Shown here in pieces: positions 11,503 to 64,000 of a stretch of DNA of 64,000 nucleotides. Every line of letters begins with the position of its first letter. Positions within the stretch are counted from its first letter, which is position 1. Source of the stretch: Octopus sinensis (taxonomy: Eukaryota); contig NC_043005.1 in NCBI RefSeq assembly GCF_006345805.1, positions 55,056,001 to 55,120,000 on the forward strand. The letters are read 5' to 3'. The position numbers and the translations under genes were made by a program. Below the pieces are notes generated by a model. The model did not search any database and was not told the origin of the DNA. It worked only from the letters and a program-made list of their open reading frames with translations.

Positions 11503-12969
11503 TATACATTGAAGCTGTTTTCAATTTCACTGCCACCCCATGCATTATTATAACCACTGTCTGCTGATATATTTTATTCCTACTTCTGGACTCTTAAAAA
11601 GAAGATACTAATACTTAGCGAGTGTGCTACTAAGTAAATTAAACATTCTAACCTTGTATATCTTCTTTGAGGAATTCATACCCACACACTAATTATGTCT
11701 TAGTTTGAGGAAATCTCTCAGTTTTTTTTTTACAGTGGAATTTTCTTCTTGTTTTTAGCCTATGTCTCAAGTCTGTTATTTGTAAATTTGATAATCTTGT
11801 CACATCTCAAAGCCTTGTTAGTGTTGAGGAGCTGTGTACTTTATTATACTTCCTTCTTAAAGAACATTACCCCCAAAAATCAGACCTGGCCCCACAAATC
11901 CAGCCGGCATTGCTCATTTCTTCAGTTTTACCATCTCCTTTCTAAATAAATCTCAAAGACATATGTAGCATAGTGTAATGCGACAATTCATAGTAGTTGA
12001 TATTACTTTATGCATATGTAGTGCAATAGAATTTGCAGATTTACCAGTTTGATAGTATTTCCAATTCTACTTAGTTTAAATTCATAAAGTCATTATTACT
12101 TTTTAGGATATAAAACTTGGATTTTAGAAAGTAGGGTCAAGGTTTCGAGCCTAAGCATAACTTTATAAACTGAAAGGAACTTCACCTATTTTTTTCCCCC
12201 TTAAAATCAATAAAACGTTTGGTTTGGTTTGGTAACATTAGTAGTTTATGTGATTGCTGTGGCTGGCAGTTGTGTACCAAATTATACACTCAGAAAACTA
12301 AAAAAGGGGTACGGTACTAGATATTGAAATGAAGGTGAATCTAGTTAAAGGAGGTGTGTGCATCTTAGTTTGTTAGATATGGAAAATACCTTAGATAAAG
12401 TTGTTGTTTTTTTTAAAATTCAGCCAATATTCTCAACCAGCTTAAATCAAAATTCTTTTATTTTTTTGGTTTTTATTCTTTTGAAATAGGGACTGGTTAT
12501 ACTGGAACCCCAGTTTCAAGGGTTTTAGTTGACTGTGTCTAATGCTTTGTTTTTTTATACAAGTTAACTAAAACAGTATCCGGGAAAAATTCTCACATGC
12601 AAGTACACAGACACACACACACACAAAACTGTGTTATACCTAGAAATGTTACTTTCTGTTTTTGAAAATTTAAATCTGCATGAGAATAGTAGCAGCAGTA
12701 TGCTTAATGCAGACCATTGTATTCACTTATAATCTATATTTTCTGTCTGCTGTTATTCAAGTCGATTGCTGATCTGCAATCAATGCTATCATCATGACTG
12801 CACATTTACTGCATAGACAAGAGCAGTGGCACGGCATACATTCTCTACCGACAGACAACAAAAATATATTCCATTAAACTACACAGTATCTTACACAATG
12901 AAATAGGAAAAAATGAGGGAAAAGAATTTAAACTTCGATATTTTTCTTCTTTTATTTTCTTGTTCTTAC

Positions 12970-13090
12970 CTGTGTTCTCTTAGTGAAACCTATGCAATAT
13001 TGACTGTGAACATAGGAATTCATCGTATTTCTTCCAGTATGTTATCTTACATAGATTGCGGAGCATCGAAACATATAAATATAAAATCCA
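12970..13090 (-). other. Putative 121-nt exon of a minus-strand transcript (copy 1)
   Basis: On the minus strand: T-rich tract-ttctcaag| acceptor and acacag|gtaaga donor. All frames from the acceptor contain a stop; an internal ATG gives MNSYVHSQYCIGFTKRTQ up to the donor. Confidence 0.5.
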
Positions 13091-13694
13091 CTTGAGAAAA
13101 GGAAAAAAAAAAAAAAGAAGAAAATATCTGGTATTATATCCACTTACAACCTTTCTAATAGTTTTACTCCACCATTTTTACAAAAATTATAGTAATAAGA
13201 TTTAGATAAGAAAATATAGCCATCTTCAATGAAATTAAAACAAACAAAATTTACTGTAAATCCTTGTTTTTTTTCTTTTTTCTTTTTTTTTTCTATCTCT
13301 CTCTCTTAAAGTTGTAAAGTTTGGCCTTGCAACCACATCCTTTCATTGTAAGCATATTTCCCCAGATACCCAACATAAGACGATAGTGTTTCTGAACTAA
13401 AAAAAAAAAAAAAAAAAAAATTACTTTTTTTTTTTTTTCAATTGCTTTTAATGAAAGATATCATTAGTTTTCAGCTGCTTGTCAAACAGATATTCCTCTG
13501 TACTGTACCTTTTTCTTTCTTTCTGTCTTTCTTTTTTTTTTTTTTGGCTTATTTGTTGTTGTTGTTGTTTCTTGTTGCTGTTGCAGTTGTTGTTGTGCAT
13601 ATCTGTTAGTCATCCAAGTTAGCTTGGCTGTTGCTGGTGTTAAATAAAGAAAGTGGTTATTATTATTTTTTTCTTCTTTTTTTCTTGTTCTTAC

Positions 13695-13815
13695 CTGTGT
13701 TCTCTTAGTGAAACCTATGCAATATTGACTGTGAACATAGGAATTCATCGTATTTCTTCCAGTATGTTATCTTACATAGATTGCGGAGCATCGAAACATA
13801 TAAATATAAAATCCA
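13695..13815 (-). other. Putative 121-nt exon of a minus-strand transcript (copy 2)
   Basis: Same sequence and splice signals as 12970-13090. Confidence 0.5.
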
Positions 13816-14472
13816 CTTGAGAAAAGGAAAAAAAAAAAAAAGAAGAAAATATCTGGTATTATATCCACTTACAACCTTTCTAATAGTTTTACTCCACCAT
13901 TTTTACAAAAATTATAGTAATAAGATTTAGATAAGAAAATATAGCCATCTTCAATGAAATTAAAACAAACAAAATTTACTGTAAATCCTTGTTTTTTTTC
14001 TTTTTTCTTTTTTTTTTCTATCTCTCTCTCTTAAAGTTGTAAAGTTTGGCCTTGCAACCACATCCTTTCATTGTAAGCATATTTCCCCAGATACCCAACA
14101 TAAGACGATAGTGTTTCTGAACTAAAAAAAAAAAAAAAAAAAAAATTACTTTTTTTTTTTTTTCAATTGCTTTTAATGAAAGATATCATTAGTTTTCAGC
14201 TGCTTGTCAAACAGATATTCCTCTGTACTGTACCTTTTTCTTTCTTTCTGTCTTTCTTTTTTTTTTTTTTGGCTTATTTGTTGTTGTTGTTGTTTCTTGT
14301 TGCTGTTGCAGTTGTTGTTGTGCATATCTGTTAGTCATCCAAGTTAGCTTGGCTGTTGCTGGTGTTAAATAAAGAAAGTGGTTATTATTATTTTTTTCTT
14401 CTTTTTTTTTTTTTCTTTGTCAGTGGACTTTTTGCAAATGTATTATGGTATGAATTGAGGGAGGTACCTTAC

Positions 14473-14620
14473 TGGCGGCATCTCTTGCGTCTGCTGTCCT
14501 TCGTCGCTCCTCCTTCTCCACCTCCTTGTTTCTCTCCTCCGCAGGATTTTTCCGCTCCCCCTTCCTGTATTATTCAATAGCGCACACATAGGCTGGTCTC
14601 TCCTCTCCTGTGGTAACAAC
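14473..14620 (-). other. Putative first exon of a minus-strand transcript (5' limit uncertain)
   Basis: Purine-rich leader, then gcaagagATGCCGCCA|GTAAGG (ATG at 14481-14479). An alternative donor AAG|GTACCT lies 5 nt further downstream. The exon is inside the CpG-rich segment. Confidence 0.45.
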
Positions 14621-14899
14621 AGTTGGCCAGCCACTAAAACGATGTAGCTCGTTCCTTTACAAGATATTCCCGTATAATGTAGTCGGTTAGCAGTGAGGTG
14701 TTTCTTCTTATTACGACTGTCAGATTCTATCCAATCTAAAAACGACAACTATTTTCAGCAACTAATCTTGCTGCTGTTACAACCGTCTATTGTCAGACCG
14801 GTTTCTCCATATTATATTATATTATATTATATTATTTGTATGTAACTCGGTCCGCAATCTCTTTCCTACTGTTTTTGTGCGCACCACCAGACTTCTACT

Positions 14900-15184
14900 A
14901 CTTCTCACACACTCCCAGATATTTCCCCTCCCTCCAAATAGGGAGTCATGGGAAGAGCTTATTGGCTCCACTTAGTGTTGTTGGACTCATCTTTGGTTCA
15001 CCTGCTGCTGCTGCTGCTGCTGTTGTTGTTAGTATTCACTAGGACTGTAACACCGTACTCCACCCCTGCTATCTCTAGCCATGTCTGAAGAGTGTATTTG
15101 AAAATCATTCTGTGCCTGGTGACCGGCAGGTAGGCAGGTGATGGTGCCTCTTAGTTCCAGATGTTGACCACGGTGCCGAGTGAG
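14900..15184 (+). other. Putative first (leader) exon of a long plus-strand gene (5' limit uncertain)
   Basis: Ends in a consensus donor GAG|GTAAGT. GC-rich, with a (CTG)n tract and ATGs at 14948, 15081, 15141 and 15161. Confidence 0.6.
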
Positions 15185-15577
15185 GTAAGTTTTCGAGGAA
15201 ACTCCCTTGTTACGATCAAACACACACACACACAAATACATTCACAGAATCCCTATAATGTACGCGTGCACTCTCAGATATATATATATATGTACACATA
15301 ATATATACTCACGGGATTGCTAGCTAATACGGTCTTTCATTCATACGGCGTCTGGTTCTCTGAACATCGTTCATATTTCATAGACGCCTCGTTTGTAAGA
15401 TTTGTACAAAATACATGTATAATGCATACACTCATTTTCGCTATCATATATAGATATTCGATTTTACAGCATTACAAATTTTTTTAGGATTATTGATGGT
15501 CTGTTTCAAGTGATGGAAAGAAAAAGAAAAGTGTCTTTACGCTGCTTTATTTCCAACTTAGTATGATCATTGTAATA

Positions 15578-15638
15578 TCTATCTTTCTATCTATCTATCT
15601 ATCTGTCTATCTATCTATCTATCTATCTATCTATATGT

Positions 15639-15670
<32 letters not shown>

Positions 15671-15674
15671 ATGT

Positions 15675-15706
<32 letters not shown>

Positions 15707-15741
15707 ATGTTTATCTATCTATCTATCTATCTGTCTATCTA

Positions 15742-15772
<31 letters not shown>
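15578..15772. repeat. (TATC)n microsatellite with a 36-bp higher-order unit
   Basis: The tatgtt interruption recurs three times at 36-bp spacing. Confidence 0.92.
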
Positions 15773-16339
15773 CATTACCTCCGATCAGATATAAATGTAT
15801 GTATGTGTTTAATCAAACTAATGCCAGTTACGTTTCTATATCACATTAGATCTCTGAATAAAAGAATCCAATTTGCTTTATTTTTTAAATTTATTTATTT
15901 ATTTATTCATTTATTTTAAGTACTATCTTAGCTCTCGTCGTCGGGCATTTTCAGATTTTTATAGTACCAGCTTCGTTCGACAGATAAAAGAAGCCAATGT
16001 CAAGATATTATACCCGAAATAACCATCTATGAATTAAATAAGTGAATGCTTTGAATGTATGTAATATAATTTTAGCGGATCGTGTAATTGTGCTGACGGC
16101 TGTCGTCGTTATCGGAGGGTTATCTCCCTTACTTAAAAGGCAGGTCGACATGGAAGCTTGCGAGCATAAATCATACAGAATTATTATTATTACACTTCAA
16201 TAAAACTTGCTGGAGAGATTTTTTTTTTATATCATATATCTATCTTCCATGTAGACATTCTGCTGTACATATTGATTTATATTTTTTTTCACTAGCGTTT
16301 CAGCATTCTACGTCTTATTATTTTTTTTCACTTTGACAG

Positions 16340-16390
16340 GTTCACATCAATGTATCTATTCTTAGTTACCTTTATAATACACACACACAG
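16340..16390 (+). other. Putative 51-nt cassette exon
   Basis: ttttttttcactttgacag| acceptor and cag|gtaatt donor; open in phase 0 (VHINVSILSYLYNTHTQ). Confidence 0.35.
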
Positions 16391-17096
16391 GTAATTTCTA
16401 TCGGTGGGTGGTGGTCATGTTATTTCGTTTCTTCTTTCTCCTCATCGACAGAGCAGTGGCAGTTATTGAACTGTCATTATAAGTTTGCTTTCTTTCTTTC
16501 TTTTTTTCTTCCTTTCTGCGCATTTATTTTATACGCTTTTTTTTCCTTCTTTCTCTTCGTTTTGTTCTCGTTGTTCCTTCATCATTTAGTTAGGCGTTCA
16601 CTTTCAATTTTCATTACAAAGTGAGCTGCACATGTTCAACTTGGGATCTAACCTTGTTTTCTTCGTTTTACGTCGTCGTATTCGTCCCCGTTGGACATTC
16701 CATCAGACACTATCTCATTAATAAAAACAGAAAAATTCATGGACATACATACACACACGCGCGTGCATATATACATACATATACATATATATATGTGAGT
16801 CTGTGTTTGTTAGACGAACATATAATAATACTATTGTGACTTACGTCTTATTGATTTAGCTCGTCTTTTATTTAGGAATCTGCATGTAATCTGCTAACTG
16901 ATTAAATTGTTAGGTTACGTTCATGACAGTTGATTGCAATACGTGTGTACCTGTAGGTGCGTGCGTAGAGGAAGACACAGACAGAATGAAAGAAAGAAAA
17001 AGAAAAGGTGGGTGGTGGGGGCGGGAGTTTGATTAGCGTCGATGATGATTTCTCTTTGAATTCTTCTACGTGAAGTCAGTCAATTAGTCTTTTACC

Positions 17097-17133
<37 letters not shown>

Positions 17134-18799
17134 GATAGTGATTCCATTCCATTATCGTCTCGGCTTTATCAATGTATATAGACTACGCACACACGTACAT
17201 GGGTCTCTCTCTCTGTTCGATAACCGATCGAGTGAAAGAATTCCAACTTTTTTTTTTTTAATGCATGTGTGTGTGTGTTAGATTTATGAATTTCTCGTCG
17301 GGAAAAACGAATAAACATAACCTTTAATGAATGTAGTTAGATTTTTCGTTTTGTTTTTCCCACCCCACTAAGGTAAAAGAAATATATCCAAACATGTAAA
17401 AGACTTTAGTCATTTAATTAGAAACTACTACTTGGTGTTTCTTTGAACTATTTTCAATAGTCTTTTTTTTTCTCTTTGAAATGTTATCATTCACACATTT
17501 CTACTTTAAAACACTTATTTGATTAGACAAATCACAATATTATAGACATTTAAAAAAAATCATTTCTAGTAGCGTTGTTACGTTGATTTCCAACTTTGCA
17601 TTCTTTTCTTCAAATCTTATAGTCATTTATATAAGTTGAGGAGTTTTGCAATGGAATAATTTAGTATTTGTTGTAAAAAAGTTATTAGATAACAAAGAAA
17701 TAAGAATGTGTGCGTCATGTATTTCATTTTAACTTATTCATCATGTTACTCGAAACTAAAATTGGAAGAAAAAAAAAGAAAAAGAAATTGTGACGGAAAA
17801 AATAATAAATCTTTTAACTTGATCAAATGGTAAAAATATTCATAGAAATATCTGTGCTTGGGATCCAGTTTCATTTTTATTTCTATGATATTTGATTTAA
17901 AATAATTTAAATTAATTGCAGCAACTTTAATAATTTTGCATGTTTTATGAAAGAAATATTTTAATTCCTTGATATTAAGATTTAAAAAAATTTTTAAATA
18001 CTTCTGGAATTACATATTTTTTTATCTTTCAACTAATTAGCAAACTTTTATATATAACCATGTAACTGCAGATCTTTTAAGCTTTAATCTATTTAGAATC
18101 TTTGCAAAAGTATCTATGGACATAAATTCTATCTTTTTCTATAAAATTTAATTTGCTGTAACTATTTTTTAAATTGATATTAAATTAACTTGAACTAAAA
18201 ATATCAGTTTAATGGCTTCAATAATAATTTCTTTAGTTCAGGTTTATTCTTCCAGAGTTGTGACTTAAATGAAACAATATTGAAAATGTTTAATGGGAGA
18301 CGCCAATACTAAAAGCCACATGTTTCTAACTTCAATAGAAGCTATCAATTCTACGCACCACTACCTATGTCTATGTAACTAAGAGATAAAACACAGTTGA
18401 TTGACTGCTTATCAAGGTGATAAGATGATAATCCAAAACCGGAGATACATGTCATTATGTAGAATCAAATGAATTTTTGAAATGAATGACTTCAGGTGAA
18501 ATTCAGTGACATTCTTATCTTTCTCCGATTTCTTTCAAACACTGCATTTATGGGGCTTTCTTTGTGTTTCATTAGACATTAGGTGTTTTATTTTTATCCT
18601 TTTCATAAATTCTTTTTAAGTAATTCAATTTTGGATATGTCCCAGGTTTTATATTGCTTAGACTAAAGTAGTGATACATGTTGGTAGAATGTTTCTGAAT
18701 CTTTGAAATAGTACTAACTACTTAAACATAGGCTCTTTATTGTGATTATTGTTTTTGCAACTTATGCATAACTTTTATAGTTCTGTATTAAATTGTTTC

Positions 18800-18888
18800 T
18801 CAATTCTCATTGATATATACCTTTTCTTGTATTTCTAGGTAAGCACTGTTTTTCTATAACAATAAAAGCAAAAGCCAAGTGAGTAAGT
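18800..18888 (+). other. Candidate recursive splice site 1 with RS-exon
   Basis: ccttttcttgtatttcTAG|GTAAGC at 18838/18839; downstream overlapping donors GTGAGTAAGT at 18879 and 18883. Confidence 0.55.
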
Positions 18889-29849: not shown

Positions 29850-30050
29850 AAATGAGCTGCGACGTCACAGGTGCCAAGCTGTATCGACCTTTGCCTTTCC
29901 CTAGGATAACATCGGTGGCGTGGAGGGGGTAGGCTGGTATGCGTGGACGGCTGCTGGTCTTCCATAAACAACCTTGCCCAGACTTGACTTGTACCTCGGA
30001 GGGTAGCTTTCTGGGTGCAATCCCATGGTCATTCATGACTGAAGGGGGTT
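29850..30050 (+). mobile_element. 3' half of SINE family D
   Basis: Aligns with 33705-33902 (gcgacgtcacaggtgccaagct...catgaccgaaggggg). Confidence 0.85.
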
Positions 30051-30122
30051 CACAAAAATATATGTGTATATATATATATTAATATATATATATATATGTG
30101 TGTACATGTATGTATATATATG

Positions 30123-30940: not shown

Positions 30941-31083
30941 ATCATCATCATCATCGTTTAACGTCCGCTTTCCATGCTAGCATGGGTTGGACGGTTCAAC
31001 TGGGGTCTGGCAAGCCCGAAGGCTGCACCAGGCCAGTCAGATCTGGCAGTGTTTCTACAGCTGGATGCCCTTCCTAACGCCAA
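30941..31083 (-). mobile_element. 5'-truncated retroposon, family E, with (GAT)n tail
   Basis: Reverse complement reads ggcgttaggaagggcatccagc...catgctagcatggaaagcggacgttaaacgat(gat)n. Related fragments occur at 29350, 41730, 42261, 42645, 47220 and 55990. Confidence 0.8.
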
Positions 31084-31253
31084 TATATACATATGTATAT
31101 CTATATATGTATATATTTGTATATATATATGTATATATGTATGAACATATATATATATATATATTTGTATAAATATATATTTATATATATATATCTGTAG
31201 GCATATATGTATGTATATATTTGTATACATATATCTGTAGGCATATAAGTATG

Positions 31254-31311
<58 letters not shown>

Positions 31312-32282
31312 TGTATGTATGTATATATGTATGTATGTATAATATGTATGTGTATATATGTATGTATGTATATATATATAATGTATGTTATAGTATGTAT
31401 GTATATATGTATGTATAATATATATATGTATGTATATCTGTATGTATATATATATATGTATGTATATATATATGTATGTATATATATATGTATGTATATA
31501 TATATGTATGTATATATGTATATATATGTATGTATATATATGTATATATATGTATGTATATATATATGTATGTATATATATATATGTATATATATATGTA
31601 TATATATATATATATATGCATATATATATGTATACATATGTATATGTATATATATGTGTGTATGTATATTATATATGTGTGTATGTATATATATATGTAT
31701 GTATATAAATATGTGTGTATGTATATATGTATGTATATATATATGTGTGTGTATATATATATGTGTATACATATATGTATATATGTGTATGTATATATAT
31801 ATGTGTATGTATATATATGTATGTATATATATATATGTATCTATGTGTATGTATATATATATATGTGTGTGTGTATATATATATGTGTATACATATATAT
31901 ATATATGTATATATGTGTATGTATATATATGTATATATGTGTATGTATATATATGTATATATGTGTATGTATATATATGTATATATATGTATGTATATAT
32001 ATATATATATGTATCTATGTGTATGTCTATATATGTATATATATATATGTATGTATATATACATGTATATATATGTATGTATATATACATGTATCTATAT
32101 GTATGTATATATATATGTATATATATGTATATATTATGTATATATATAGGTATGTATATATATATGTATTATTATATATGTTATATATGTATGTATATAT
32201 ATATGTTATATATATGTATGTATATATATATGTATATATATGGTATGTAGTATATATAATGTATATAGTATATATATGTATG

Positions 32283-32322
<40 letters not shown>

Positions 32323-32720
32323 TGGTATGTATATATATGTATGTATATATATGTATGTTATATAATATGTATGTATATCTATATATGTATATATATGTAT
32401 GTATGTATATATATATGTATGTATATATATATATGTTATGTATATATATATATGTATATATAGTATGTATATATATAATATGTATATATATATATGTATA
32501 TATATATGTATGTATATAATATGTATGTATATATGTATGTATGTATAGTATATATATATATGTATGTATACGTATATATATATGTATTATATATATATAT
32601 GTATGTATACGTATATATATTGTATATATATATATCTGTATGTATCTATATATGGTATATATATGTATGGTATATAGTATGTATGTTTATATATAATGTA
32701 TGTGTATATATATGTATGTG

Positions 32721-32756
<36 letters not shown>

Positions 32757-33500
32757 GATGTATATATAGGTAAATGTATATTATCTATATGTGTATATAT
32801 ATTGTATGTGTATATATATGTATGTGTTATATATGTATGTATATATATATGTATATATATGTATTATATATATATGTATATTATATGTATGTATATATAT
32901 ATGTATATAGATGTATATATATGTTATATATATATGATCTATTATATGTATAATATATAATATATATATGTATATGTATGTATTATTATATGTATGTATA
33001 TATATATATATATGTATATGTATGTATATTACTATGTATTATATGTATGTATATATATATGTATGTATATATATATGTATGTATATGTATGTATGTATAT
33101 ATATATATGTATTTATATATATATATGTATATATATATGTAATATATATATGTCTATATATGTATGTATATGTATGTATGTATATGTATGTATGTATAGA
33201 TATATATGTATGTATATATATATATGTATATATATGTATGTATATATATATATGTATATATATGTATGTCTATATATATATGTATATGTTGTATGTATAT
33301 GTATGTATGTATGTATTATGTATATGTATGTATATATATATGTATGTATATCTATGTATGTTATATGTATGTATATATATATATGTATGTATATTATGTA
33401 TCTATATATGTATGTATATATATGCATGTATGTATTTATATATATTATGTATGTATATATGCATGTATGTATTTATATATATATATGTATATGCATGTAT

Positions 33501-33557
<57 letters not shown>

Positions 33558-33568
33558 TATATGTATGT

Positions 33569-33902
33569 GAAGGCTCATGTCACTGTGGTTAGAGTGTCAA
33601 GCATATGATCACAAAGTTAGGAGTTTGAAGCCCGGACCAGGCTACATGTTGTGCTCTTGAGCAAGTCACTTATTTCACGTTGCTCCAGTTCACTCAGCTG
33701 TGGAAATGAGTTGCGACGTCACAGGTGCCAAGCTATATCGCCGTTTGCCTTTCCCTTGGATAACACTGGTGTCATGGAGAGGGAAGGCTGTTATGCACGG
33801 GCGACTTCTGGTCTTCCATAAACTACCTTGCCTCGACTTGTGCCTGGGAGGGTAACTTTCAAGGTGCCATCCCACGGTTAGTCATGACCGAAGGGGGTCT
33901 CC
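33569..33902 (+). mobile_element. tRNA-derived SINE, family D (near full length)
   Basis: gtggttagagtgtc head, ggagtttgaagccc B-box-like motif, CORE-like cttgagcaagtcactt, and 3' half shared with 29850-30050. Confidence 0.82.
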
Positions 33903-33949
33903 GCATATATATGTGTATATGTATATGTCTTGATACATGTGTGTATCCC

Positions 33950-34135
33950 TGTCAATAAGAAACTATGACATTACAACCAGCCAGGAAAAGTTTTCTCTAC
34001 ATTTGCGGCACCTGCCAGACGGAGTGTTTCTCCAGGATAGGACTACACAGCCACAGCATGAATTGTAAAAGCCGGACTAGATTATTTTATGGGCAACTCC
34101 ATTGTCTCCAGAGACAAAAAGGATGCCAGCAACAT
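33950..34135 (+). mobile_element. 3' end of an RTE-clade LINE
   Basis: Translation FLYICGTCQTECFSRIGLHSHSMNC matches the CxxCxRxCxSRIGLxSH C-terminal motif of RTE-clade ORF2 and is followed by a short 3' UTR-like tail. Confidence 0.85.
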
Positions 34136-37100
34136 ATGTGTATAAATATATATATGTGTATACTTATATATACATTTATACATATGTATGTTTATATATA
34201 TGTATGCATATATATGTGTATACATGTATGTATGTATATATATATATATATGTGTATATATGTAAGTATATATGTGTATATATGTAAGTATATATGTGTA
34301 TATATGTATTTATATATGTGTATGTATGTATATATATGTGTATATATGTATGTATATATATATATGTGTGTATATATGTATGTATATATAAGTTTATATA
34401 TGTATGCATATATATGTGTATATATATATGTATATATATATGTATATATATATACATGTATATATATATACGTATATATGATGTATATATATATGTGTAT
34501 GTAGATATGCATATGTACATAGATGTATATTTATATTTGTTTATATATACATATATACATATATATATATGTATGGATAAATATATAAATATCTATGTAT
34601 GATCTATATATGTATAAATATATAGTTATAATTATATATGTATGTGTGTATATTTTTGTATGTATATATGTTATAAGCATCTGTATATATATATACTATA
34701 TATATATATATATATATATTATATATGTATGTATATCTGTATGTATGTATGTATATCTGTCTGTATGTATGTATATCTGTATATATATATGTATGTATAT
34801 CTGTATATATATATATATATGTATGTATATCTGTATGTATATATGTATGTATATATATATATATGTATGTATGTATATCTGTATATATATATATGTATGT
34901 ATGTATATCTGTATATATATATGTATGTATATCTGTATATATATATGTATGTATATCTGTATATATATATGTATGTATATCTGTATATATATATGTATGT
35001 ATATCTGTATATATATATGTATGTATATCTGTATATATATATGTATGTAATGTATATCTGTATAATATATTGTATGTATGTATATCTGTGTATATATATA
35101 TATATGTATGTATGTATATCTGTATATATATATATACATATATATATATTATGTTGTATCTTGTATATTTATACATATATATATATATATATGATGTATA
35201 TCTGTATATATATATATATATATGTATGTACGTATATCTGTATATATCTATATATATATATATATATACTATAATATATAATATATGTATGTATGTATAT
35301 CTGTATTATATATATATGTATGTATGTTACTGTATATATATATATATGTTGTATATCTTATATATATATATGGTATGTATTATCTGTATATATATATATG
35401 TATGTATATCTGTATATATATATATAGTATGTATATCTGTATATATATTATATATAATGTATATTTATATATATAGTTAGTATCTAGATATATATTTATA
35501 TATATATATATATATCTATAAATATATATATATATATAGATATATATACATACATATATATGTGTGTATATATGTATATGTTTAATGTATAAATGTGTAT
35601 ATTATATTGTGTATATATAATATATATATAATATACATGTATATATATTATACATACATATGTATATACATGTATGTATATATATGTATAAATGCGTATA
35701 TATATATCTATCTTTGTATATATGTATGCATATATATGTATATATATGTGTATGTATATATGTGTAATTATATATATATGGATATATATACATATATATG
35801 TATATATATGTGTGTGATACCTATATATATGTATATATGTTCAACATATACATACATAAATGTATGTATATATGTAGGCATATCTTATATATATATATAT
35901 ATATTATATATATATATATATATCTTATATATATGCATGTGTATAATATATGTATATATATCTATATGCATGTGTATATATATAGTATATATATATATAT
36001 GCATGTGTATATATATATGTATATATATATATAGGCATGTGTATATATATAATGTATATATATATTATATGCAATGTATATATTATATGATATATATATA
36101 TATGCATGTATATATATATATGTATTATATATTTATGTATGTGTATATATATATGTATACATACATGTATATATATGAATATATATATGTATATATACAT
36201 GTATATATATGAATATATACACGTATAGATATATGAATGTATGCATATATGCACATATATATGAATATATACATGTATAGATATATGAATGTATGCATAT
36301 ATGCACATATATATGTATATATATATGCATATATATATATACATATATGACTATATATAGGTATGCGTATATATAGATATGTATGTATGTATGTATATAT
36401 ATATTTATGTATGTATGTATGTATATATATATCTATGTATGTATATATATGTATATACATATATGTAATTATATGTATATATATGTATATACATATATGT
36501 AATTATACGTATATATATGTATATACATATATGTAATTATATATATGTATATGTATATACATATATGTAATTATATATATGTATATATATATACATATAT
36601 GTAATTATATATATGTATATATATATATATATACATATATCTATGTATATATGTATGTATATACATATATATATATGTATACATATTTGTATGTATATAC
36701 ATCTGTATATATGTATGTATATACATATATATATATGTATACATATTTGTATGTATATACATCTGTATATATGTATACATATATATATATATGTATGTAT
36801 ACATGTGTATATATATATATGCATGTCTATAATTATGTATATATAGGCATGTATGTATATATATATATTTATATATATGTATGTATATGTATATATGTAT
36901 GTATACATATATATATTTGTATATGTCTGTTTATGTATATATATTCTTATATGTATATATATGTATATATATGTAAGTATATATGTGTATATATGTATGC
37001 GTATATTTGTGTATGTGTATGTATTTATCTGTATGTATGTATGTATATATATGTATTTATGTATATATGTATATATGTGTATGTATATATATATATATAT

Positions 37101-37246
37101 ATATATTTATATAAGCATATAAATATGTATATATATAATTGTATGTATACATATGTTAGTATTCCTGTTTATATATATGTTTGTATACGTATGTGTATAT
37201 ATATATATATATATTTATATGTATATGTTTGCATATATCCGTTGAA

Positions 37247-40696: not shown

Positions 40697-41101
40697 TACT
40701 CATTTACTTGTTTCAGTCTTTTGACTGCAGCCATGCTGGAGCACCGCCTTTAATCGAGCAACTCGACCCCGGGACTTATTCTTTTGTAAGCCCAGTACTT
40801 ATTCTACCGGTCTCTTTTGCCGAACCGCTAAGTAACGGGGACATAAACACACCAGCATCGGTTGTCAAGCAATGCTAGGGGAACAAACACAGACACACAA
40901 ACACACACATGCATATATATATATATATATATATATATGACAGACTTCTTCCAGTTTCCGCCTACCAAATCCACTCACAAGGCTTTGGTCGGCCCGAGGC
41001 TATAGTAGAAGACACCTGCCCACTGTGCCACGCAGTAGGACTGAACCCAGAACCATGTGGTTGGTAAACAAGCTACTTACCACACAGCCACTCCTGCGCC
41101 T
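40697..41101 (-). mobile_element. tRNA-derived CORE-like SINE, family B (young, full length)
   Basis: Reverse complement has A box ggctgtgtggta, B box gggttcagtcc, CORE-like gggcaggtgtctt and an internal microsatellite. Highly similar to 47637-48047 and 61311-61726. Confidence 0.92.
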
Positions 41102-41290
41102 ATATATATATGTATATATATATATATATTTTAAAACTTCTACGAAAATTAATTGATTGAGTTGAAATAATTCAAATAATTTTTTTTAACATTTATTGTC
41201 TACTTAAAGTAATTTCCGTTATTTAATGCAGTATAAATAATCTCTGTCGAGGAAGTTCATATACCGTGTGTCTTTTATATCTCGTTTGTG

Positions 41291-42094: not shown

Positions 42095-42532
42095 AGGTGT
42101 GCGAGTGGCTGTTAGGTAACTTAGTTACTAACCACATTTTAGTCTCACTGTATGGCACCTTGGGCAAGTGTCTTTTATTATAGCCTTGTGCCGATGAAGG
42201 CCTTGTGAGTGGATTTGGGAGAAGGAAAGTGAAAGAAGCCCGTCATATATGTATATATATGTCCAACCCATGCCAACGTGGAAGGCGGACATTAAACGAT
42301 GATGATGAAGTGTGTGTGTGTGTCTGTGTTTGCCCCCCCCCCCCCAACATCACTTGACAACTGGTGCTGGTGTGTTTACGTCCCCGTAACTTAGCGGTTC
42401 GGCAAAAAGTGTATGGTAGAACAAGCACTAGGCTTACAAAAATTGAGTCCCGGGGTTGATTTGCTTAACTAAAGGCAGTGCCCCAGCATGGCTGCAGGCA
42501 AATGGCTGAAACTAAGAAAAGAATAAAAGTAT
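42095..42532 (+). mobile_element. Family B SINE (older) with a nested family E tail at 42261-42309
   Basis: ggcaccttgggcaagtgtctt core and ttagcggttcggcaaaa 3' body; the extra (GAT)n-tailed insert sits in the internal microsatellite. Confidence 0.85.
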
Positions 42533-42747: not shown

Positions 42748-43274
42748 CACATACATTTACTGGAGTAGCTGTGATGGTGAGAAGTTTACTTCTAACCCAT
42801 GTGCTTTTGAGTTTTCCTTTATGTGTTTCAGCTTCAGTGTCCCCTTCTATAGTATTGGGTCCTCGAAAGTTTTGTGGTTGTATATGTTAAATGTGTTCAA
42901 AAAGAAACCGTTTGTGTCTATGCATATATGTATAAAAGTCATAAAATGTGTCTCTATATACATACATGTGAATGTGTGTGTGTGTGTTGTGGTAATACTT
43001 GCATTTGTTGAATTAAGATTGTTGTTTCATAATATACTCAGTGATGCAGAAAATGTTATTCCTCCTAATCTTTTTGTCACTCCTATTCATATTTAATATA
43101 TTTGCACCCATACAGATATATATCGACGTATATATGTGTGTGTGTGTGTGTGTGTGTTTTTGTATATGTGTCTCTGTACATCAATGTGAGTATATCTTGT
43201 ATGGCATTTTTACATCTCGTTCTTTGTATGAAATGTGGTGTTTTACAATCGTTATTTTTTTTTTTTGTCCACAT

Positions 43275-43616
43275 AGGCAGAGGAGTAGCTGCATGGTAAG
43301 AAGCTTGCTTTCCAACCATGTGGTTCTGGGTTCAGTCCCACTGCGTGGCACCTTGGGCAAGTGCCATCTACTGTAGCCTTGGGCTGACCAAATTCTTGTG
43401 AGTGGATTTGGTAGACAGAAACTAAAAGAAGCCTGTCGTATATAATCTGTGCGTGTGTTTGTCCATCCATCACCATTTGACAACCAGTGTCGGTGTGTTT
43501 ACATCCCCATAATTTAGTGGCTCGGTAAAAAAAGACATACAGTAAGTACCAGACTTAAAAAATAAGTACTGGGTTCAACTCATGGCCGCAGTCTAATGAC
43601 TGAAACAGGTGAAAGA
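43275..43616 (+). mobile_element. Family B SINE
   Basis: gggttcagtcccactgcgtggcaccttgggcaagtg head/core and 3' gtctaatgactgaaacag tail. Confidence 0.87.
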
Positions 43617-47636: not shown

Positions 47637-47838
47637 TACTCTTTACTCTTTTACTTGTTTCAGTCATTTGACTGTGGCCATGCTGGAGCACCGCCTTTAG
47701 TCGAGCAAATCGACCCCGGGACTTATTCTTTGTAAGCCCAGTACTTATTCTATCGGTCTCTTTTGCCGAACCGCTAAGTGACGGGGACGTAAACACACCA
47801 GCATCGGTTGTCAACCAATGCTAGGGAGACAAGCACAT

Positions 47839-47875
<37 letters not shown>

Positions 47876-48047
47876 CAAATATACGACAGGCTTCTTTCAG
47901 TTTCCGTCTACCAAATCCACTGACAAGGCATTGGTCGGCCCGGCGCTATAGCAGAAGACACTTGCCCAAGATGCCACGCAGTGGGACTGAACCCGGAACC
48001 ATGTGGTTGGTAAGCAAGCTACTTACCACACAGCCACTCCTGTGCCT
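47637..48047 (-). mobile_element. Family B SINE (young, full length)
   Basis: Near-identical to 61311-61726. Confidence 0.92.
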
Positions 48048-49528
48048 ATTTGTTGGGAAACAAATTTCTTAACCACAAAGCCACACTTGTGCCTGTATAA
48101 AATAGTTTTCACAATAATTTTGGCTATTTTTTTCATTATGATTTTATTGATATTCAGATTTAATTTTCAAAAATCAAATTAGTTTTTCAAAATCTTTTTT
48201 TTTCTTTTTACCTTCCTTTTAAAATAAAGAACAACCACTTAATTGATTCAACCCCTCTCCATGTTATAATATACACACTGTTGTCATGCTATTTTTTTTC
48301 TTTCTAACTCAGTTATTAAAAAATACCAATGTAATGTTTCCAATAGTAATTTGTTTATGTGGTATAATTATGTGAAGTGATCTATTTCAACTTCTCATAA
48401 TTCTCGAATCTGGGTTATGAAAAGCTTGAAATCGGATAAAATTAACAGAGAAGAAAAATAATCATTAGAAGGTAGAAAGATAAATCACTTTTTTTTTACT
48501 TTTTTTGTTTTTTGCATTGTTAACAATCTGCTTATCTGTACATATAGAAAGTACATGCTGGGTGTTTTGATTGGTTTTGGGGTTTTTTTTACAGGTTTTT
48601 TTTTTTTTATATTTCCCAAATTTTTGTTGCTTTCTTTACATTGGACTAGATAAAATATTCTTGATTAGGGAAAAAAAAATATTTTGTAAAAAGATTTTCC
48701 TTTCTCTCTTTTTTCTTTTTTTTTTTTATCGTATCTATGTGAAGTGTTCAGTGCTGACATACACAATATTAGATGAGATAACTTCCAAAGATTTTGTCTG
48801 TAGATAATGGTTCCAAAAGGAGATCAAAATTACATTGATTCCTTCTTTGTAAAACTCTATCAAATGTTAGTTGGTATTACTACCACCACTAGTTTTTCAT
48901 GCTGGCAGATTTTTATCTTAGCTCTTAAAGTCTTCATTCTGCGATGATCTGAAGATGTAATAAGGCTTCTGAAAAGGAAAAAAACTGAGAGGAAAAACTC
49001 TTAAATTGACACGTAATAAAAAGAGATTATTGTGCTAAAATAAATGATTCTTAAGGATAAGGAGTTTTAGATTGTCAAATTAGCCTCATTAATACAAATG
49101 ATAACAATATTGGAAGGCCAGCAATTAATGAAACAAATGTATAAGCTGGGTTTCTTTTTCTAATTCTTAAAAAATTTTTTAAATGCCAAGTAGCTGGTAA
49201 ATTAGTGAGAGTAAGACTCAACTAATACTCAGTCAACTAGTTTTTTTCATCACATAACACACACGTATGTGTGCATGTGTTTGTCTTTGAAAACTACCAT
49301 GTATCAAGATTTTTCTGTTTTATTTTTCTCAATCAACCACCTGCAGATAGTAACACATTTTCCTCTAAGTATCTGAAATGAATAAGAGTCAAATTCTTTA
49401 AAGGCATAGCCTACTCGGTTTGGGCAATCACTCGGCATTGCCACTCAGTTCTATTTAATGGCCATGCCGCAGGATAGCAAAAGCCTTTGGGCTGGAACAC
49501 ATGAGGGAATAAGGAACCTTTTTCTTTT

Positions 49529-61310: not shown

Positions 61311-61726
61311 ACTCTCTTTTACTCTCTTTTACTTGTTTCAGTCATTTGACTGCGGCCATGCTGGAGCACCGCCTTTAGTCGAGCAACTCGACCCCGGGAC
61401 TTATTCTTTTTGTAAGCCCAGTACTTATTCTATCGGTCTCTTTTTGCCGAACTGCTAAGTGACGGGGACGTAAACACACCAGCATCGGTTGTCAAGCAAT
61501 GCTTGGGGAACAAACACAGACACACAAACACACATACATATATATATATATATGCATATATACGACAGGCTTCTTTCAGTTTCCGTCTACCAAATCCACT
61601 TACAAGGCATTGGTCGGCCCGGAGCTATAGCAGAAGACACTTGCCCAAGATGCCACGCAGTGGGACTGAACCCGGAGCCATGTGGTTGGTTAGCAAGCTA
61701 CTTTCCACACAGCTACTCCTGCGCCT
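61311..61726 (-). mobile_element. Family B SINE (young, full length)
   Basis: Near-identical to 47637-48047. Confidence 0.92.
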
Positions 61727-62414
61727 ATCGTTCACATCGTTTATCGTTTTTAGAAATGAGTGAATTTTTCAAAATTTACGTATATACTCTATAATTTTGC
61801 TACTCAGAGGTATAAAATACTGAGTATTAGTGATTGCAAATCAAAGCAAAAGATCTGTATTTGTTTAATTTTCTTTCTTATTTTTGGTAATATTTTGAAT
61901 ATTTGGGAGAAAGAGCTGGCTGCTTTCTACTTAATTTAATTGGTTTTATTTTATTTTTTGTATACTTAAAAAACAGTCTTTCTCTAGTATTCTAAACTGT
62001 ATCAGAATACCACCTTTCAATTAATGCTTAATCATGTAATGTAGATAGAATTCATTAGATGATGATGATGATCATTATCATCATCATCATCATCTTTGAT
62101 GTTTTGAACTTTTTTTTTTTTTTTGTTTTTTTTATTTCTGTGAGTAGCGGTGTGACCAGTACAATTGTACTCATGACCTTCTTTCTCTCAGCCTATCTAT
62201 CATTTATCTATCACATGTTTGATATTGATTTTATAAGTATTCCATTTTTAAATTTCCTCATTACACAAATTCTCTCCCATGAATAAATGTAATTATCACT
62301 TGAAGAATTTTTGTTGAAATGCACTATTTAAATAACTCATTTTTGCCCCTTGACAAATACTGGTGATTTCATATTAATTAATAATTAGTTCAGTAGACTT
62401 AATAATATACGTAA

Positions 62415-62548
62415 TATCTTACTTTAATTTTTTTTTTTTTTTTTTTTTCTTTAGGTAAGTCGAGAACTTTTCAAGATTCATAGCTTAAATGGATTACGTA
62501 ACTTCTCAAAATGTTTTGTTTTGGAGATCATGCCTTGTGAAGGTAAGG
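62415..62548 (+). other. Candidate recursive splice site 2 with 88-nt RS-exon (62455-62542)
   Basis: ttaat-T-tract-cttTAG|GTAAGT at 62454/62455; downstream donor GAAG|GTAAGG at 62543. Confidence 0.6.
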
Positions 62549-62979: not shown

Positions 62980-64000
62980 AAAAGTTGAAATGCTGGTGAC
63001 AAAAAATAAAAGAAGAAAGAAAGCTGAGAAGTAGTTTTATTATGAAAAACATATTAGGCAGAGTTGTATGGTGGCAGGGTGGGATAAGGGGCACCAAGTC
63101 ATATATAAGAAAACTCTTCCTTTAGTGAATACTATCAAAAAGTCAGACATAGTTTTATACACTGGAGAAGTTACAGTAAACAAAGCTATAAAGAAGATGA
63201 AAATGGTAAAGCCATTGGCAGGGCCATTAACTGGCATTGTTAAATTGGACCAAAAAAGAAAATAGAAAAACAACACCTTCAGGATAGGTAAACTTGGAGC
63301 TGATCATTGAAGCAAGTAATTCACGAGGGTGTTATCCCCAATGTCTGTCAAGTTGCTTTCATTATAAATTTATAATAGTAAGAATTATACTCTAGAGCAG
63401 TGGTTCTCAACTGGAGGCCCCTGAGGGTCCATATAAGATTTTTGGGGGTCTATGCAACAAAATAGTAAATTGTGGATCCACAGTAGTTTTTTGAGGGCCC
63501 CTGAAAAAATTTTGCGTTAAATATATGTATTGGTATGTGCTGCAAAAAACAGGTCCCTTTCTCTAACATTTTACATAGATTAACCTACACAAGTTAATGT
63601 GTGAAAAACAAAATAGAATTTTGGAAGAAGTTTCTATAAAACAACTTTTTAAACATTAAATGGTTATGGGGATCCACCAGAATAAAATAGTAATCAAAGT
63701 GGTCCATGGATAAAAAATGCTTGAGAATCCCTGCACTAGAGAGTGTGAGGGTGATGTAAGAAATGATTGAGTAATGAAGGCAGTAAAACAGTTAGTTCTT
63801 AGTGGAACTTGTTTAAGCCAATTAATAAAAACTACATGCAGGTTTCTTTGAGACGAAGAATACAGATGCATTGTTCTTTGCAAAATGGATGCAACATAAA
63901 TAGTTGGTGTTGAGGACAAAATTAATCCTTCTTTGGTTTAATTTAAATGTCTGACACAGTTGTTTTAAGTGGTAGTCATAGAAAAATTACAGGTAAAAAT
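62980..64000 (+). mobile_element. Degenerate RTE-clade LINE ORF2 fragment (pre-RT linker and RT start), running off the window
   Basis: Manual translation gives NKAIKKMK-GKA-GP-TGIV, KQVIHEGVIPN and, after the MITE, GFFETKNTDALFFAKWMQHK*L. These parallel the RTE motifs AIKxMKxGKAAGPSGIV, NQVIxEGVIPxDW and MQFGFxxGRxTTDAIFxxRQLQEKYL. Confidence 0.8.
63398..63733. mobile_element. hAT (Charlie-like) MITE
   Basis: TIR cagtggttctcaa/ttgagaatccctg; 8-bp TSD ctctagag (63390-63397) and cactagag (63734-63741), matching the NTCTAGAN preference of Charlie-type hAT elements. Confidence 0.88.

What the first reader, a model, noticed from the sequence alone, without database searches (positions are those of the whole stretch)
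62415..62548. Candidate recursive splice site 2 whose RS-exon is open and contains an ATG
Seen: a ~21-T tract, then cttTAG|GTAAGT (perfect donor consensus directly after a strong acceptor), and a second strong donor GAAG|GTAAGG 88 nt later. The segment is open in phase 0 (VSRELFKIHSLNGLRNFSKCFVLEIMPCE) and has an ATG (MPCE) just before the donor. Inference: competition between the two donors could switch between a zero-length exon and inclusion of an exon that extends the frame from 15161 or supplies a new start codon. That would couple recursive splicing to N-terminal choice.
Basis: partly seen in the sequence, partly recalled or inferred. Interest (0 to 1): 0.72.

Follow-up and report, generated by a model that had tools for sequence, protein, structure and literature searches.

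The report
Candidate recursive splice site, octopus intron
In what looks like a very long intron of an unidentified octopus gene sits a textbook "recursive splice site" (an acceptor fused to a perfect donor, with a short throw-away exon behind it); this is a known way of removing long introns in steps, its use here is unproven, and the idea that it selects the protein's start is not supported.

Summary
There are 21 T (62428-62448), then cTTTAG|GTAAGT (exon start 62455). A second donor, AAG|GTAAGG, follows at 62543. The 88-nt segment is open in frame 0 and has an ATG at 62530.

The arrangement is not chance. The acceptor is one of 3 of 3,080 YAG sites with 20/20 upstream pyrimidines. The donor at 62543 and the putative exon-1 donor (GAG|GTAAGT, 15185) rank 3 and 2 of 7,240 GT sites. 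It is the only exon-like unit in the window at strict thresholds.

Joining exon 1 to 62455 regenerates the identical 9-mer GAG|GTAAGT, which pairs slightly better with U1 than the downstream donor does. This matches the published anatomy of ratchet points with cryptic RS-exons in flies and vertebrates.

The DNA is octopod: a SINE matches Octopus vulgaris. A CpG-island-like domain at 14.5-17.5 kb supports a nearby promoter.

The N-terminal-choice idea is weak:
- 88 nt shifts the frame.
- An open frame with an ATG occurs at 9-15% of positions.
- No protein among 5.8 billion contains either peptide.

No transcript or orthologous sequence could be reached, so use of the site remains inferred. Verdict: a probable new member of a known kind.

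The parts
14500..17500 (+). CpG-island-like domain, taken as the promoter-proximal region of the host gene
   Evidence: CpG o/e is 0.77-1.3 here against 0.41 for the whole window. The sequence is unique, not repeat.
15161..15184 (+). 3' end of the putative upstream exon (ATG 15161, MLTTVPSE), ending in GAG before donor GTAAGT (15185-15190). An alternative donor CAG|GTAGGC lies at 15130.
   Evidence: The donor at 15185 ranks 2 of 7,240 GT sites and the one at 15130 ranks 4th on the + strand. The exon's 5' limit is unknown: either a TSS in the CpG domain or acceptor-like sites at 15079 and 14424. No transcript evidence.
62418..62427 (+). Candidate branch points: CTTAC (A at 62421, 33 nt from the AG) and TTAAT (A at 62426, 28 nt from the AG)
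   Evidence: Read from the sequence. They match the yUnAy consensus (established knowledge). No AG occurs between 62397 and 62452. Such motifs are common in AT-rich DNA, so this is weak evidence.
62428..62454 (+). Polypyrimidine tract (T21 C TTT) and acceptor AG
   Evidence: 20/20 pyrimidines upstream of the YAG, 1 of 3 such sites among 3,080. It is the longest T-run in the window.
62455..62460 (+). GTAAGT: the donor core regenerated once the upstream exon is joined at 62455 (the ratchet point)
   Evidence: After joining, the site reads GAG|GTAAGT, the same 9-mer as the exon-1 donor. The U1 duplex is -10.7 kcal/mol, or -12.3 if donor 15130 was used (CAG|GTAAGT).
62455..62542 (+). 88-nt RS-exon, probably cryptic
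   Evidence: Unique in the window. GC is 34% against 26% in the flanks. It is the only exon-like unit at strict thresholds. Its length is not a multiple of 3. It has ATGs at 62489 (exits in phase 0), 62511 (closed by TGA) and 62530 (exits in phase 1). No protein in the database contains its peptide.
62543..62548 (+). RS-exon donor AAG|GTAAGG, which defines the exon and competes with the regenerated donor
   Evidence: Rank 3 of 7,240 GT sites. The U1 duplex is -10.0 kcal/mol, slightly weaker than the regenerated site.
18839..18878 (+). A second, weaker acceptor|donor site in the same putative intron: ttctAG|GTAAGC, then a 40-nt unit ending at CAA|GTGAGT
   Evidence: It is the second-best of 316 AG|GT sites. 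All four sites passing the filters are on the + strand.

Best explanation
This is an intronic recursive splice site (ratchet point) with its cryptic RS-exon. It sits about 47.3 kb into an intron of at least 48.8 kb of an unidentified gene on the + strand of an octopod genome.

Inferred mechanism:
1. The 88-nt unit is recognised by exon definition. The T21-CTTTAG acceptor and the AAG|GTAAGG donor at 62543 are bound together.
2. The upstream exon (ending GAG at 15184, or CAG at 15129) is spliced to 62455, removing the first 47 kb.
3. That junction regenerates GAG|GTAAGT (or CAG|GTAAGT). This pairs with U1 as well as or better than the donor at 62543, so it is normally used for the next step.
4. 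The 88 nt are removed with the rest of the intron and leave no trace in the mRNA (a 'zero-length exon').
5. Occasional use of the donor at 62543 would add 88 nt, shifting any frame that starts in exon 1 and introducing three upstream ATGs.

Shown: the sequence anatomy and its statistical rarity, the regenerated 9-mer, the relative U1 pairing, a CpG-island-like promoter region near the putative upstream exon, and octopod origin.

Inferred: that the + strand is transcribed across the site, that 15184 is the partner exon, and that any of these splice events occurs.
For: Anatomy and rarity:
- Anatomy confirmed.
- The acceptor|donor 14-mer occurs once against 0.06 expected.
- The acceptor is in the top 3 of 3,080 sites, and the two donors rank 2 and 3 of 7,240.
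- It is the only exon-like unit at Y>=18/20 and donor >=10. All four units at Y>=16/20 and donor >=10 are on the + strand.
- All four AG|GT sites with a good tract and a good regenerated donor are on the + strand, downstream of or near the putative exon.

Donor competition:
- The regenerated 5'ss is identical to the exon-1 donor.
- U1 duplex energies are -10.7 or -12.3 against -10.0 kcal/mol.

Context:
- CpG o/e is 0.8-1.3 only at 14.5-17.5 kb.
- The exon body is absent from every known protein, and its length is not a multiple of 3. Both are typical of cryptic RS-exons.

Literature:
- RS sites are tandem SA|SD with a short cryptic exon (~50 nt, <100 nt).
- These exons are generally out of frame.
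- The ratchet-point donor is usually the stronger one.
- RS acceptors are unusually strong.
- RS introns are enriched among long first introns.
(PMC8605326; PMC6224609; PMC6110457; PMC5126111.)
Against: - There is no RNA evidence of any kind: no junction reads, lariats or sawtooth coverage.
- Cross-species conservation could not be tested. No orthologous locus was reachable.
- The host gene is unidentified and its next exon is outside the window.
- The upstream exon is inferred from a donor motif and a CpG-rich domain only.
- The margin between the competing donors is small (0.7 kcal/mol with the donor at 15185), so constitutive skipping is not assured.
- The segment lengths (3.7 kb, then 43.6 kb) are less even than the 9-15 kb typical of flies.
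- Recursive splicing has not been described in cephalopods in the searchable literature.
- The 5'ss weight matrix used for ranking was written from memory of vertebrate tables, not trained on octopus.
Confidence: 0.55

Rival explanations
1. This is an ordinary expressed exon, constitutive or alternative, untranslated or carrying the true start codon. It merely happens to begin with GTAAGT. The regenerated donor is suppressed, for example by the exon junction complex, and the 88 nt are present in the mRNA.
For: - Both splice signals are among the best in the window.
- The exon is slightly richer in GC than its flanks.
- ATG 62530 has A at -3, a better context than ATG 15161. ATG 62489 leaves in phase 0.
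- A coding start of only 4 or 18 residues would be invisible to the protein search.
- Annotated exons that regenerate a 5'ss are common in deuterostomes and are kept in by the EJC (PMC6224609).
Against: - A perfect GAG|GTAAGT or CAG|GTAAGT regenerated site is the class that escapes EJC repression, according to PMC6224609.
- GTAAGT as the first six bases of an exon is rare by chance (about 3.4e-4 at this base composition).
- An extreme acceptor directly abutting it is the signature of ratchet points.
- No database protein contains the frame-0 peptide or the exon-1 octapeptide.
Confidence: 0.2
2. This is an unused pseudo-exon. A slippage-grown T-run, or the poly(A) tail of an antisense retroposon, happens to lie next to AG|GTAAGT and near another donor-like motif. 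The spliceosome ignores it, or the + strand is not transcribed here.
For: - T and A runs of 12 or more are frequent in the window (13 and 10).
- The genome is rich in SINE and LINE tails.
- There is no expression or conservation evidence.
- A scan of many windows will turn up rare motifs. With the looser acceptor class, my arithmetic gives about 1e-4 such composites per window, or a handful per 2.7-Gb genome.
Against: - With the acceptor class actually observed (20/20 pyrimidines), the same arithmetic gives about 1e-6 to 4e-6 per window, under 1 per genome.
- No target-site duplication and no repeat copy of the segment was found.
- The site lies on the same strand as, and downstream of, the best donor in the window, next to the only CpG-island-like domain.
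Confidence: 0.15
3. One reading: regulated competition between the two donors toggles between a zero-length exon and inclusion, and inclusion gives the protein a different N-terminus or start codon.
For: - The frame from 15161 is open through the exon.
- Two ATGs (62489 and 62530) are open to the donor, leaving in phases 0 and 1.
- The two donors are close in strength, which is the condition for a regulated switch (PMC8605326).
- Ubx m1/m2 show that expressed RS-exons exist.
Against: - The exon is 88 nt. The frame-0 readings leave in phase 1 while the skipping isoform leaves in phase 0.
- An open frame with an ATG is expected at 9-15% of positions.
- No protein contains either peptide.
- In an inclusion mRNA, ATG 15161 would lie upstream of and out of frame with ATG 62489.
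- Cryptic RS-exons are generally out of frame and harmful when included.
Confidence: 0.07

Closest known systems
Drosophila intronic ratchet points with cryptic RS-exons (Burnette 2005; Duff 2015; Joseph 2018 and 2021, PMC8605326; Pai 2018, PMC6110457)
   Same: - Long pyrimidine tract + AG|GTAAGT.
- A downstream donor less than 100 nt away defines a short exon that is then skipped.
- The exon's length is not a multiple of 3.
- The regenerated donor is at least as strong as the exon donor.
- The site lies in a very long, probably first, intron.
   Different: - The organism is a cephalopod, where no case is documented.
- The exon is 88 nt, against about 50 nt typical in flies.
- The intron segments are very uneven.
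- Conservation and sawtooth or junction evidence, which define the fly set, are missing here.
Vertebrate RS sites acting as a 'binary splicing switch' in long genes (Sibley 2015, as summarised in PMC5126111 and PMC6224609)
   Same: - The RS-exon is defined first.
- The regenerated GT then competes with the downstream GT.
- Inclusion is expected to be deleterious (frameshift or PTC).
- Sites are preferentially located in long first introns.
   Different: In vertebrates the outcome was linked to which upstream exon is used. That cannot be examined here. The two alternative exon-1 donors (15130, 15185) would give CAG| or GAG| and slightly different regenerated strengths.
Expressed RS-exons: Ubx m1/m2 microexons (Hatton 1998, cited in PMC8605326) and the zero-length/NMD pseudo-exon of Grellscheid & Smith 2006 (cited in PMC5126111)
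   Same: One element can behave as a zero-length exon or as an included exon, depending on donor choice.
   Different: The Ubx microexons are 51 nt and frame-preserving, and they are seen in mRNA. This unit is 88 nt, frame-shifting, and absent from all database proteins.
EJC-repressed annotated RS-exons (Blazquez 2018, PMC6224609)
   Same: The exon begins with a 5'ss-like sequence, so splicing to the upstream exon rebuilds a donor at the junction.
   Different: Those exons are mostly constitutive, with moderate regenerated sites. Here the regenerated site is a perfect consensus, the class reported to escape repression.

Membership tests
Recursive splice site (ratchet point) with RS-exon | Juxtaposed strong 3' splice site and 5' splice site: (Y)n-YAG|GTAAGT | tested here: met
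   T21-C-TTTAG|GTAAGT at 62428-62460. It is a unique match in the window against 0.06 expected, and the acceptor is in the top 3 of 3,080.
Recursive splice site (ratchet point) with RS-exon | A downstream 5' splice site within about 100 nt that defines a short RS-exon | tested here: met
   AAG|GTAAGG lies 88 nt downstream and ranks 3 of 7,240 GT sites. The criterion comes from PMC6224609 and PMC8605326.
Recursive splice site (ratchet point) with RS-exon | The regenerated donor is as strong as or stronger than the RS-exon donor (a condition for zero-length behaviour) | tested here: met
   GAG|GTAAGT gives -10.7 and CAG|GTAAGT -12.3, against -10.0 kcal/mol for the RS-exon donor in U1 duplexes. 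PWM scores are 12.08 against 11.76. The margin is small.
Recursive splice site (ratchet point) with RS-exon | Location inside a long intron, on the sense strand of a transcribed gene | tested here: inconclusive
   The best donor in the window (15185) and the only CpG-island-like domain lie 47 kb upstream on the same strand. No transcript, no annotated protein and no downstream exon is available.
Recursive splice site (ratchet point) with RS-exon | Splicing intermediates: junction reads into the site, lariats from the regenerated donor, sawtooth nascent-RNA coverage | not testable with these tools
Recursive splice site (ratchet point) with RS-exon | Strong conservation of the SA|SD core with a poorly conserved exon body | not testable with these tools
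   No orthologous octopod locus could be fetched. Only one unrelated O. vulgaris locus was reached.
Expressed, protein-modifying RS-exon (Ubx m1/m2 type) | Exon present in mature mRNA or protein | tested here: not met
   No protein among 5.8 billion shares three 5-residue words with the exon peptide or with MLTTVPSE. Caveats: only annotated octopus proteins appear to be in the database, and a 4- or 18-residue start would escape the search.
Expressed, protein-modifying RS-exon (Ubx m1/m2 type) | Frame-preserving length | tested here: not met
   88 nt, and 88 mod 3 = 1.

The most novel reading that the evidence does not exclude
The unit is a regulated, expressed RS-exon in a cephalopod. Near-balanced donor competition, possibly tuned by which exon-1 donor (15130 or 15185) was used, decides between two mRNAs. 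One starts translation in exon 1 or further downstream. The other starts at an ATG inside the 88-nt exon; 62489 leaves in phase 0. Recursive splicing would then select the protein's N-terminus.
Probability: 0.07. Interest if true: 0.6.

Novelty: new member of a known kind. Interest (0 to 1): 0.3.

Why it matters
If used, this would be a clear example of recursive splicing outside insects and vertebrates, in an animal group with very long, repeat-laden introns. No paper in the searched library mentions recursive splicing together with octopus.

It would suggest that stepwise removal of long introns through cryptic RS-exons is ancestral to bilaterians. It would also give annotators of cephalopod genomes a motif class to look for: an extreme pyrimidine tract, AG|GTAAGT, and a donor within 100 nt.

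It adds no new mechanism. The switch between a zero-length and an included exon is already described.

Tried and rejected
**Searches for transcripts, proteins or orthologous loci**
- Exact look-ups of two window ORFs to reach the source contig or its relatives: not on record.
- Search with the SINE-spanning ORF 660 nt upstream of the site: one hit only. It is an Octopus vulgaris 'hypothetical predicted protein' that is a SINE copy at another locus. This identified the clade but did not reach the orthologous intron.
- Search with a 3,595-aa concatenate of the non-SINE stop-free segments of 45 aa or more from 53-64 kb, to fish for any annotated ORF near the site: 2,558 candidates, none significant.
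- Metagenome scan for the 30-mer across the site: nothing.

**Other checks that found nothing**
- Rfam at gathering thresholds and a tRNA scan of the window.
- Test of whether the unit is part of a repeat or the tail of an antisense retroposon. Only the T-run matches other T/A runs, and the best candidate target-site duplication is a chance-level 8-mer. Not supported, but not excluded genome-wide.
- Search for protein-coding exons in six frames: only microsatellite, SINE and LINE-tail ORFs, so the host gene could not be named.

**Literature**
- Two literature searches were uninformative.

**Considered and rejected**
- A cryptic last exon using AATAAA at about 62674. That hexamer is expected about once per 600 nt at this base composition, so it carries no weight.

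Full report
**1. What is in the sequence**

The finding's description is exact.
- On the + strand a run of 21 T (62428-62448) is followed by C, TTT and the acceptor AG (62453-62454).
- The next six bases are GTAAGT (62455-62460).
- Eighty-eight bases further on, GAAG|GTAAGG places a second donor with GT at 62543.
- The 88-nt segment is open in frame 0 (VSRELFKIHSLNGLRNFSKCFVLEIMPCE) and ATG 62530 is in that frame.
- The short frame that starts at ATG 15161 (MLTTVPSE, followed by GAG|GTAAGT at 15185) continues open through the segment.
- Upstream of the tract there are two branch-point-like motifs: CTTAC with its A at 62421, and TTAAT with its A at 62426.
- No AG dinucleotide occurs for 56 nt before the acceptor.

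**2. Is it more than chance?**

For the splice signals, yes.
- The 14-mer YYYYNYAGGTAAGT occurs once in 128 kb of both strands, against 0.06 expected from dinucleotide shuffles.
- Only 9 AG|GTRAG sites exist on both strands. On the + strand they are 15185, 18839, 62455 and 62543.

I also ranked sites with a 5' splice-site weight matrix. I wrote this matrix from memory of vertebrate tables and used it only for ranking.
- The donor at 15185 ranks 2nd and the donor at 62543 ranks 3rd of 7,240 GT dinucleotides. On the + strand they are 1st and 2nd.
- The acceptor at 62455 is one of three YAG sites out of 3,080 with 20 of 20 pyrimidines upstream.
- I then searched for 'exon-like units', meaning an acceptor with a good tract followed by a good donor 20-250 nt later. 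This is the only one on either strand at Y>=18/20 and donor >=10.
- It is one of four at Y>=16/20 and donor >=10, and all four are on the + strand.

My own arithmetic from these counts puts the composite expectation at about 1e-6 to 4e-6 per window for the acceptor class actually observed. For a looser class it is about 1e-4. So it is unlikely even genome-wide under the strict class. Under the loose class a handful per genome is conceivable.

The 'open frame with an ATG' is ordinary by contrast. Of all 88-nt stretches on this strand, 20-26% are open in a given frame, 48% are open in at least one frame, and 9-15% are open with an in-frame ATG.

**3. Context**

*Repeat content and organism.* The window is AT-rich eukaryotic DNA (31% G+C) filled with TA/CA microsatellites and SINE copies. 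An ORF spanning the SINE 660 nt upstream of the site has one relative in 5.8 billion proteins. That relative is a 'Hypothetical predicted protein' of Octopus vulgaris. Its locus (GCA_951406725.2, OX597820.1) carries the same SINE family at 75-87% identity and has the same G+C content. The window is therefore octopod DNA. The exact species was not determined.

*Coding content.* No convincing protein-coding exon is present in any of the six frames.

*Promoter evidence.* CpG is depleted across the window (o/e 0.41), except in one unique-sequence domain at 14.5-17.5 kb (o/e 0.8-1.3). This domain contains the donor at 15185 and a second good donor at 15130. That is what an unmethylated promoter-proximal region looks like. 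It supports, without proving, a + strand transcription unit whose first long intron runs from about 15.2 kb past the end of the window. The intron would be at least 48.8 kb, with the site 47.3 kb into it.

*Uniqueness.* The 88-nt segment is unique in the window. I found no target-site duplication that would make the T-run the tail of an antisense retroposon.

**4. How it most likely works**

Joining the upstream exon to 62455 rebuilds GAG|GTAAGT, which is the very 9-mer of the exon-1 donor. If the donor at 15130 was used, it rebuilds the full consensus CAG|GTAAGT.

Duplex energies with the conserved 5' end of U1 snRNA are as follows:

| Site | ΔG (kcal/mol) |
|---|---|
| Regenerated GAG\|GTAAGT | -10.7 |
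| Regenerated CAG\|GTAAGT | -12.3 |
| RS-exon donor at 62543 | -10.0 |

This is the published anatomy of recursive splicing, as the following sources describe.
- A tandem acceptor|donor forms the 'ratchet point' (PMC8605326).
- A short cryptic RS-exon (about 50 nt, donor under 100 nt away) must be recognised first (PMC8605326; PMC6224609).
- The regenerated and downstream donors then compete, and the ratchet-point donor is usually the stronger (PMC8605326).
- Cryptic RS-exons are 'generally out of frame' and must be excluded.
- RS acceptors are stronger than ordinary ones, and RS introns are enriched among long first introns (PMC6110457).
- The 'binary switch' between a zero-length and an included exon has been formulated before (PMC5126111, citing Sibley 2015 and Grellscheid & Smith 2006).

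I therefore commit to this reading. The unit is a recursive splice site whose 88-nt exon is defined, spliced to the upstream exon, and then removed through the regenerated donor. Occasional inclusion is a by-product or a regulated minor outcome. The anatomy is shown here; every splicing step is inferred.

**5. The N-terminal-choice idea**

Arguments against:
- The exon is 88 nt. Both the frame continued from ATG 15161 and the frame from ATG 62530 leave the exon in phase 1.
- The skipping isoform leaves exon 1 in phase 0, so both cannot read the same downstream frame.
- ATG 15161 has a poor context (C at -3, T at +4) and follows several upstream ATGs with short ORFs, so exon 1 may be untranslated.
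- No protein in the database shares even three 5-residue words with the exon-1 octapeptide or the exon peptide. Octopus annotation is represented in that database.

Arguments that keep it open:
- ATG 62530 has A at -3.
- A 4- or 18-residue start would be invisible to the protein search.

Without the next exon this cannot be decided. I rate it unlikely, at about 0.07.

**6. Rivals**

- An ordinary expressed exon that happens to start with GTAAGT (0.2).
- An unused pseudo-exon (0.15).

The first rival is disfavoured by two points. A perfect regenerated donor is the class reported to escape EJC repression. An extreme acceptor abutting GTAAGT is the ratchet-point signature. The second is disfavoured by the joint rarity of the signals and by their strand and position relative to the best donor and the CpG domain.

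**7. What could not be done**

All attempts to reach the source contig, its downstream continuation or an orthologous intron failed. Use of the site and its conservation, the two defining empirical criteria, remain untested.

**8. Novelty and score**

The mechanism, including the zero-length/included switch, is known. If the site is used, it is a new member of a known kind in a clade where none is documented. Interest is 0.3.

Noticed in passing
window 18839-18884 (+): A second acceptor|donor site in the same putative intron: ccttttcttgtatttctAG|GTAAGC, followed 40 nt later by CAA|GTGAGT. It is the second-best of 316 AG|GT sites. It lies only 3.65 kb from the donor at 15185.
   Followed up: partly
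window 14500-17500: This is the only CpG-island-like domain in the window (o/e 0.8-1.3 against 0.41). It is unique sequence and probably the promoter and 5' end of the host gene.
   Followed up: partly
window 14424, 15079, 15130, 15185 (+): The putative exon 1 ends with two strong donors 55 nt apart (CAG|GTAGGC at 15130, GAG|GTAAGT at 15185). It is preceded by acceptor-like sites at 15079 (tctctAG|CC) and 14424 (20/20 pyrimidines). It could therefore be an internal 51- or 106-nt exon of a gene that starts further upstream. A 46-codon upstream ORF with a leucine run (ATG 14948) comes from a CTG/TTG microsatellite.
   Followed up: partly
window 12938-14417: A tandem duplication of about 727 bp at 99.3% identity (12938-13692 and 13665-14417). 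Each copy carries an A22 run. It lies immediately upstream of the CpG-rich domain.
   Followed up: partly
window 61400-61728 (+), 47722-48049 (+), 40775-41103 (+), 43273-43562 (-), 42138-42442 (-); L001 2957-3380: A SINE family of about 330 bp with at least five copies (71-92% identity). In the Octopus vulgaris assembly a copy is annotated as a 125-aa 'hypothetical predicted protein', most likely an annotation artefact.
   Followed up: partly
window 31083-37226 (wider block 30.0-40.0 kb): A 6-10 kb block of degenerate (AT)n / TATG-like microsatellite. G+C is 17-24% and GC skew is strongly positive (+0.3 to +0.45).
   Followed up: no
window 33700-34135 and 29850-30077: A repeated element (82% identity between the two copies). 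In the second copy it is followed by an ORF tail with a C2H2-like motif (…CGTCQTECFSRIGLHSHS…). It resembles the 3' end of a LINE ORF2.
   Followed up: no
window ~63393-63742: A MITE-like unit with imperfect 21-nt terminal inverted repeats (CTCTAGAGCAGTGGTTCTCAA … TTGAGAATCCCTGCACTAGAG, 18 of 21 complementary). This was seen by eye. The repeat finder at seed 9 did not report it.
   Followed up: partly
It is open to the donor at 62543 and leaves the exon in phase 0, the same phase as the exon-1 frame. A third ATG (62511) is closed by a TGA inside the exon.
   Followed up: yes
whole window, + strand: T exceeds A (23,773 against 20,365) almost everywhere, including upstream of 14 kb. Exon-like units are about twice as frequent on the + strand (38 against 17 at lenient thresholds). 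This is compatible with + strand transcription across the whole window, or with a plain composition bias.
   Followed up: no
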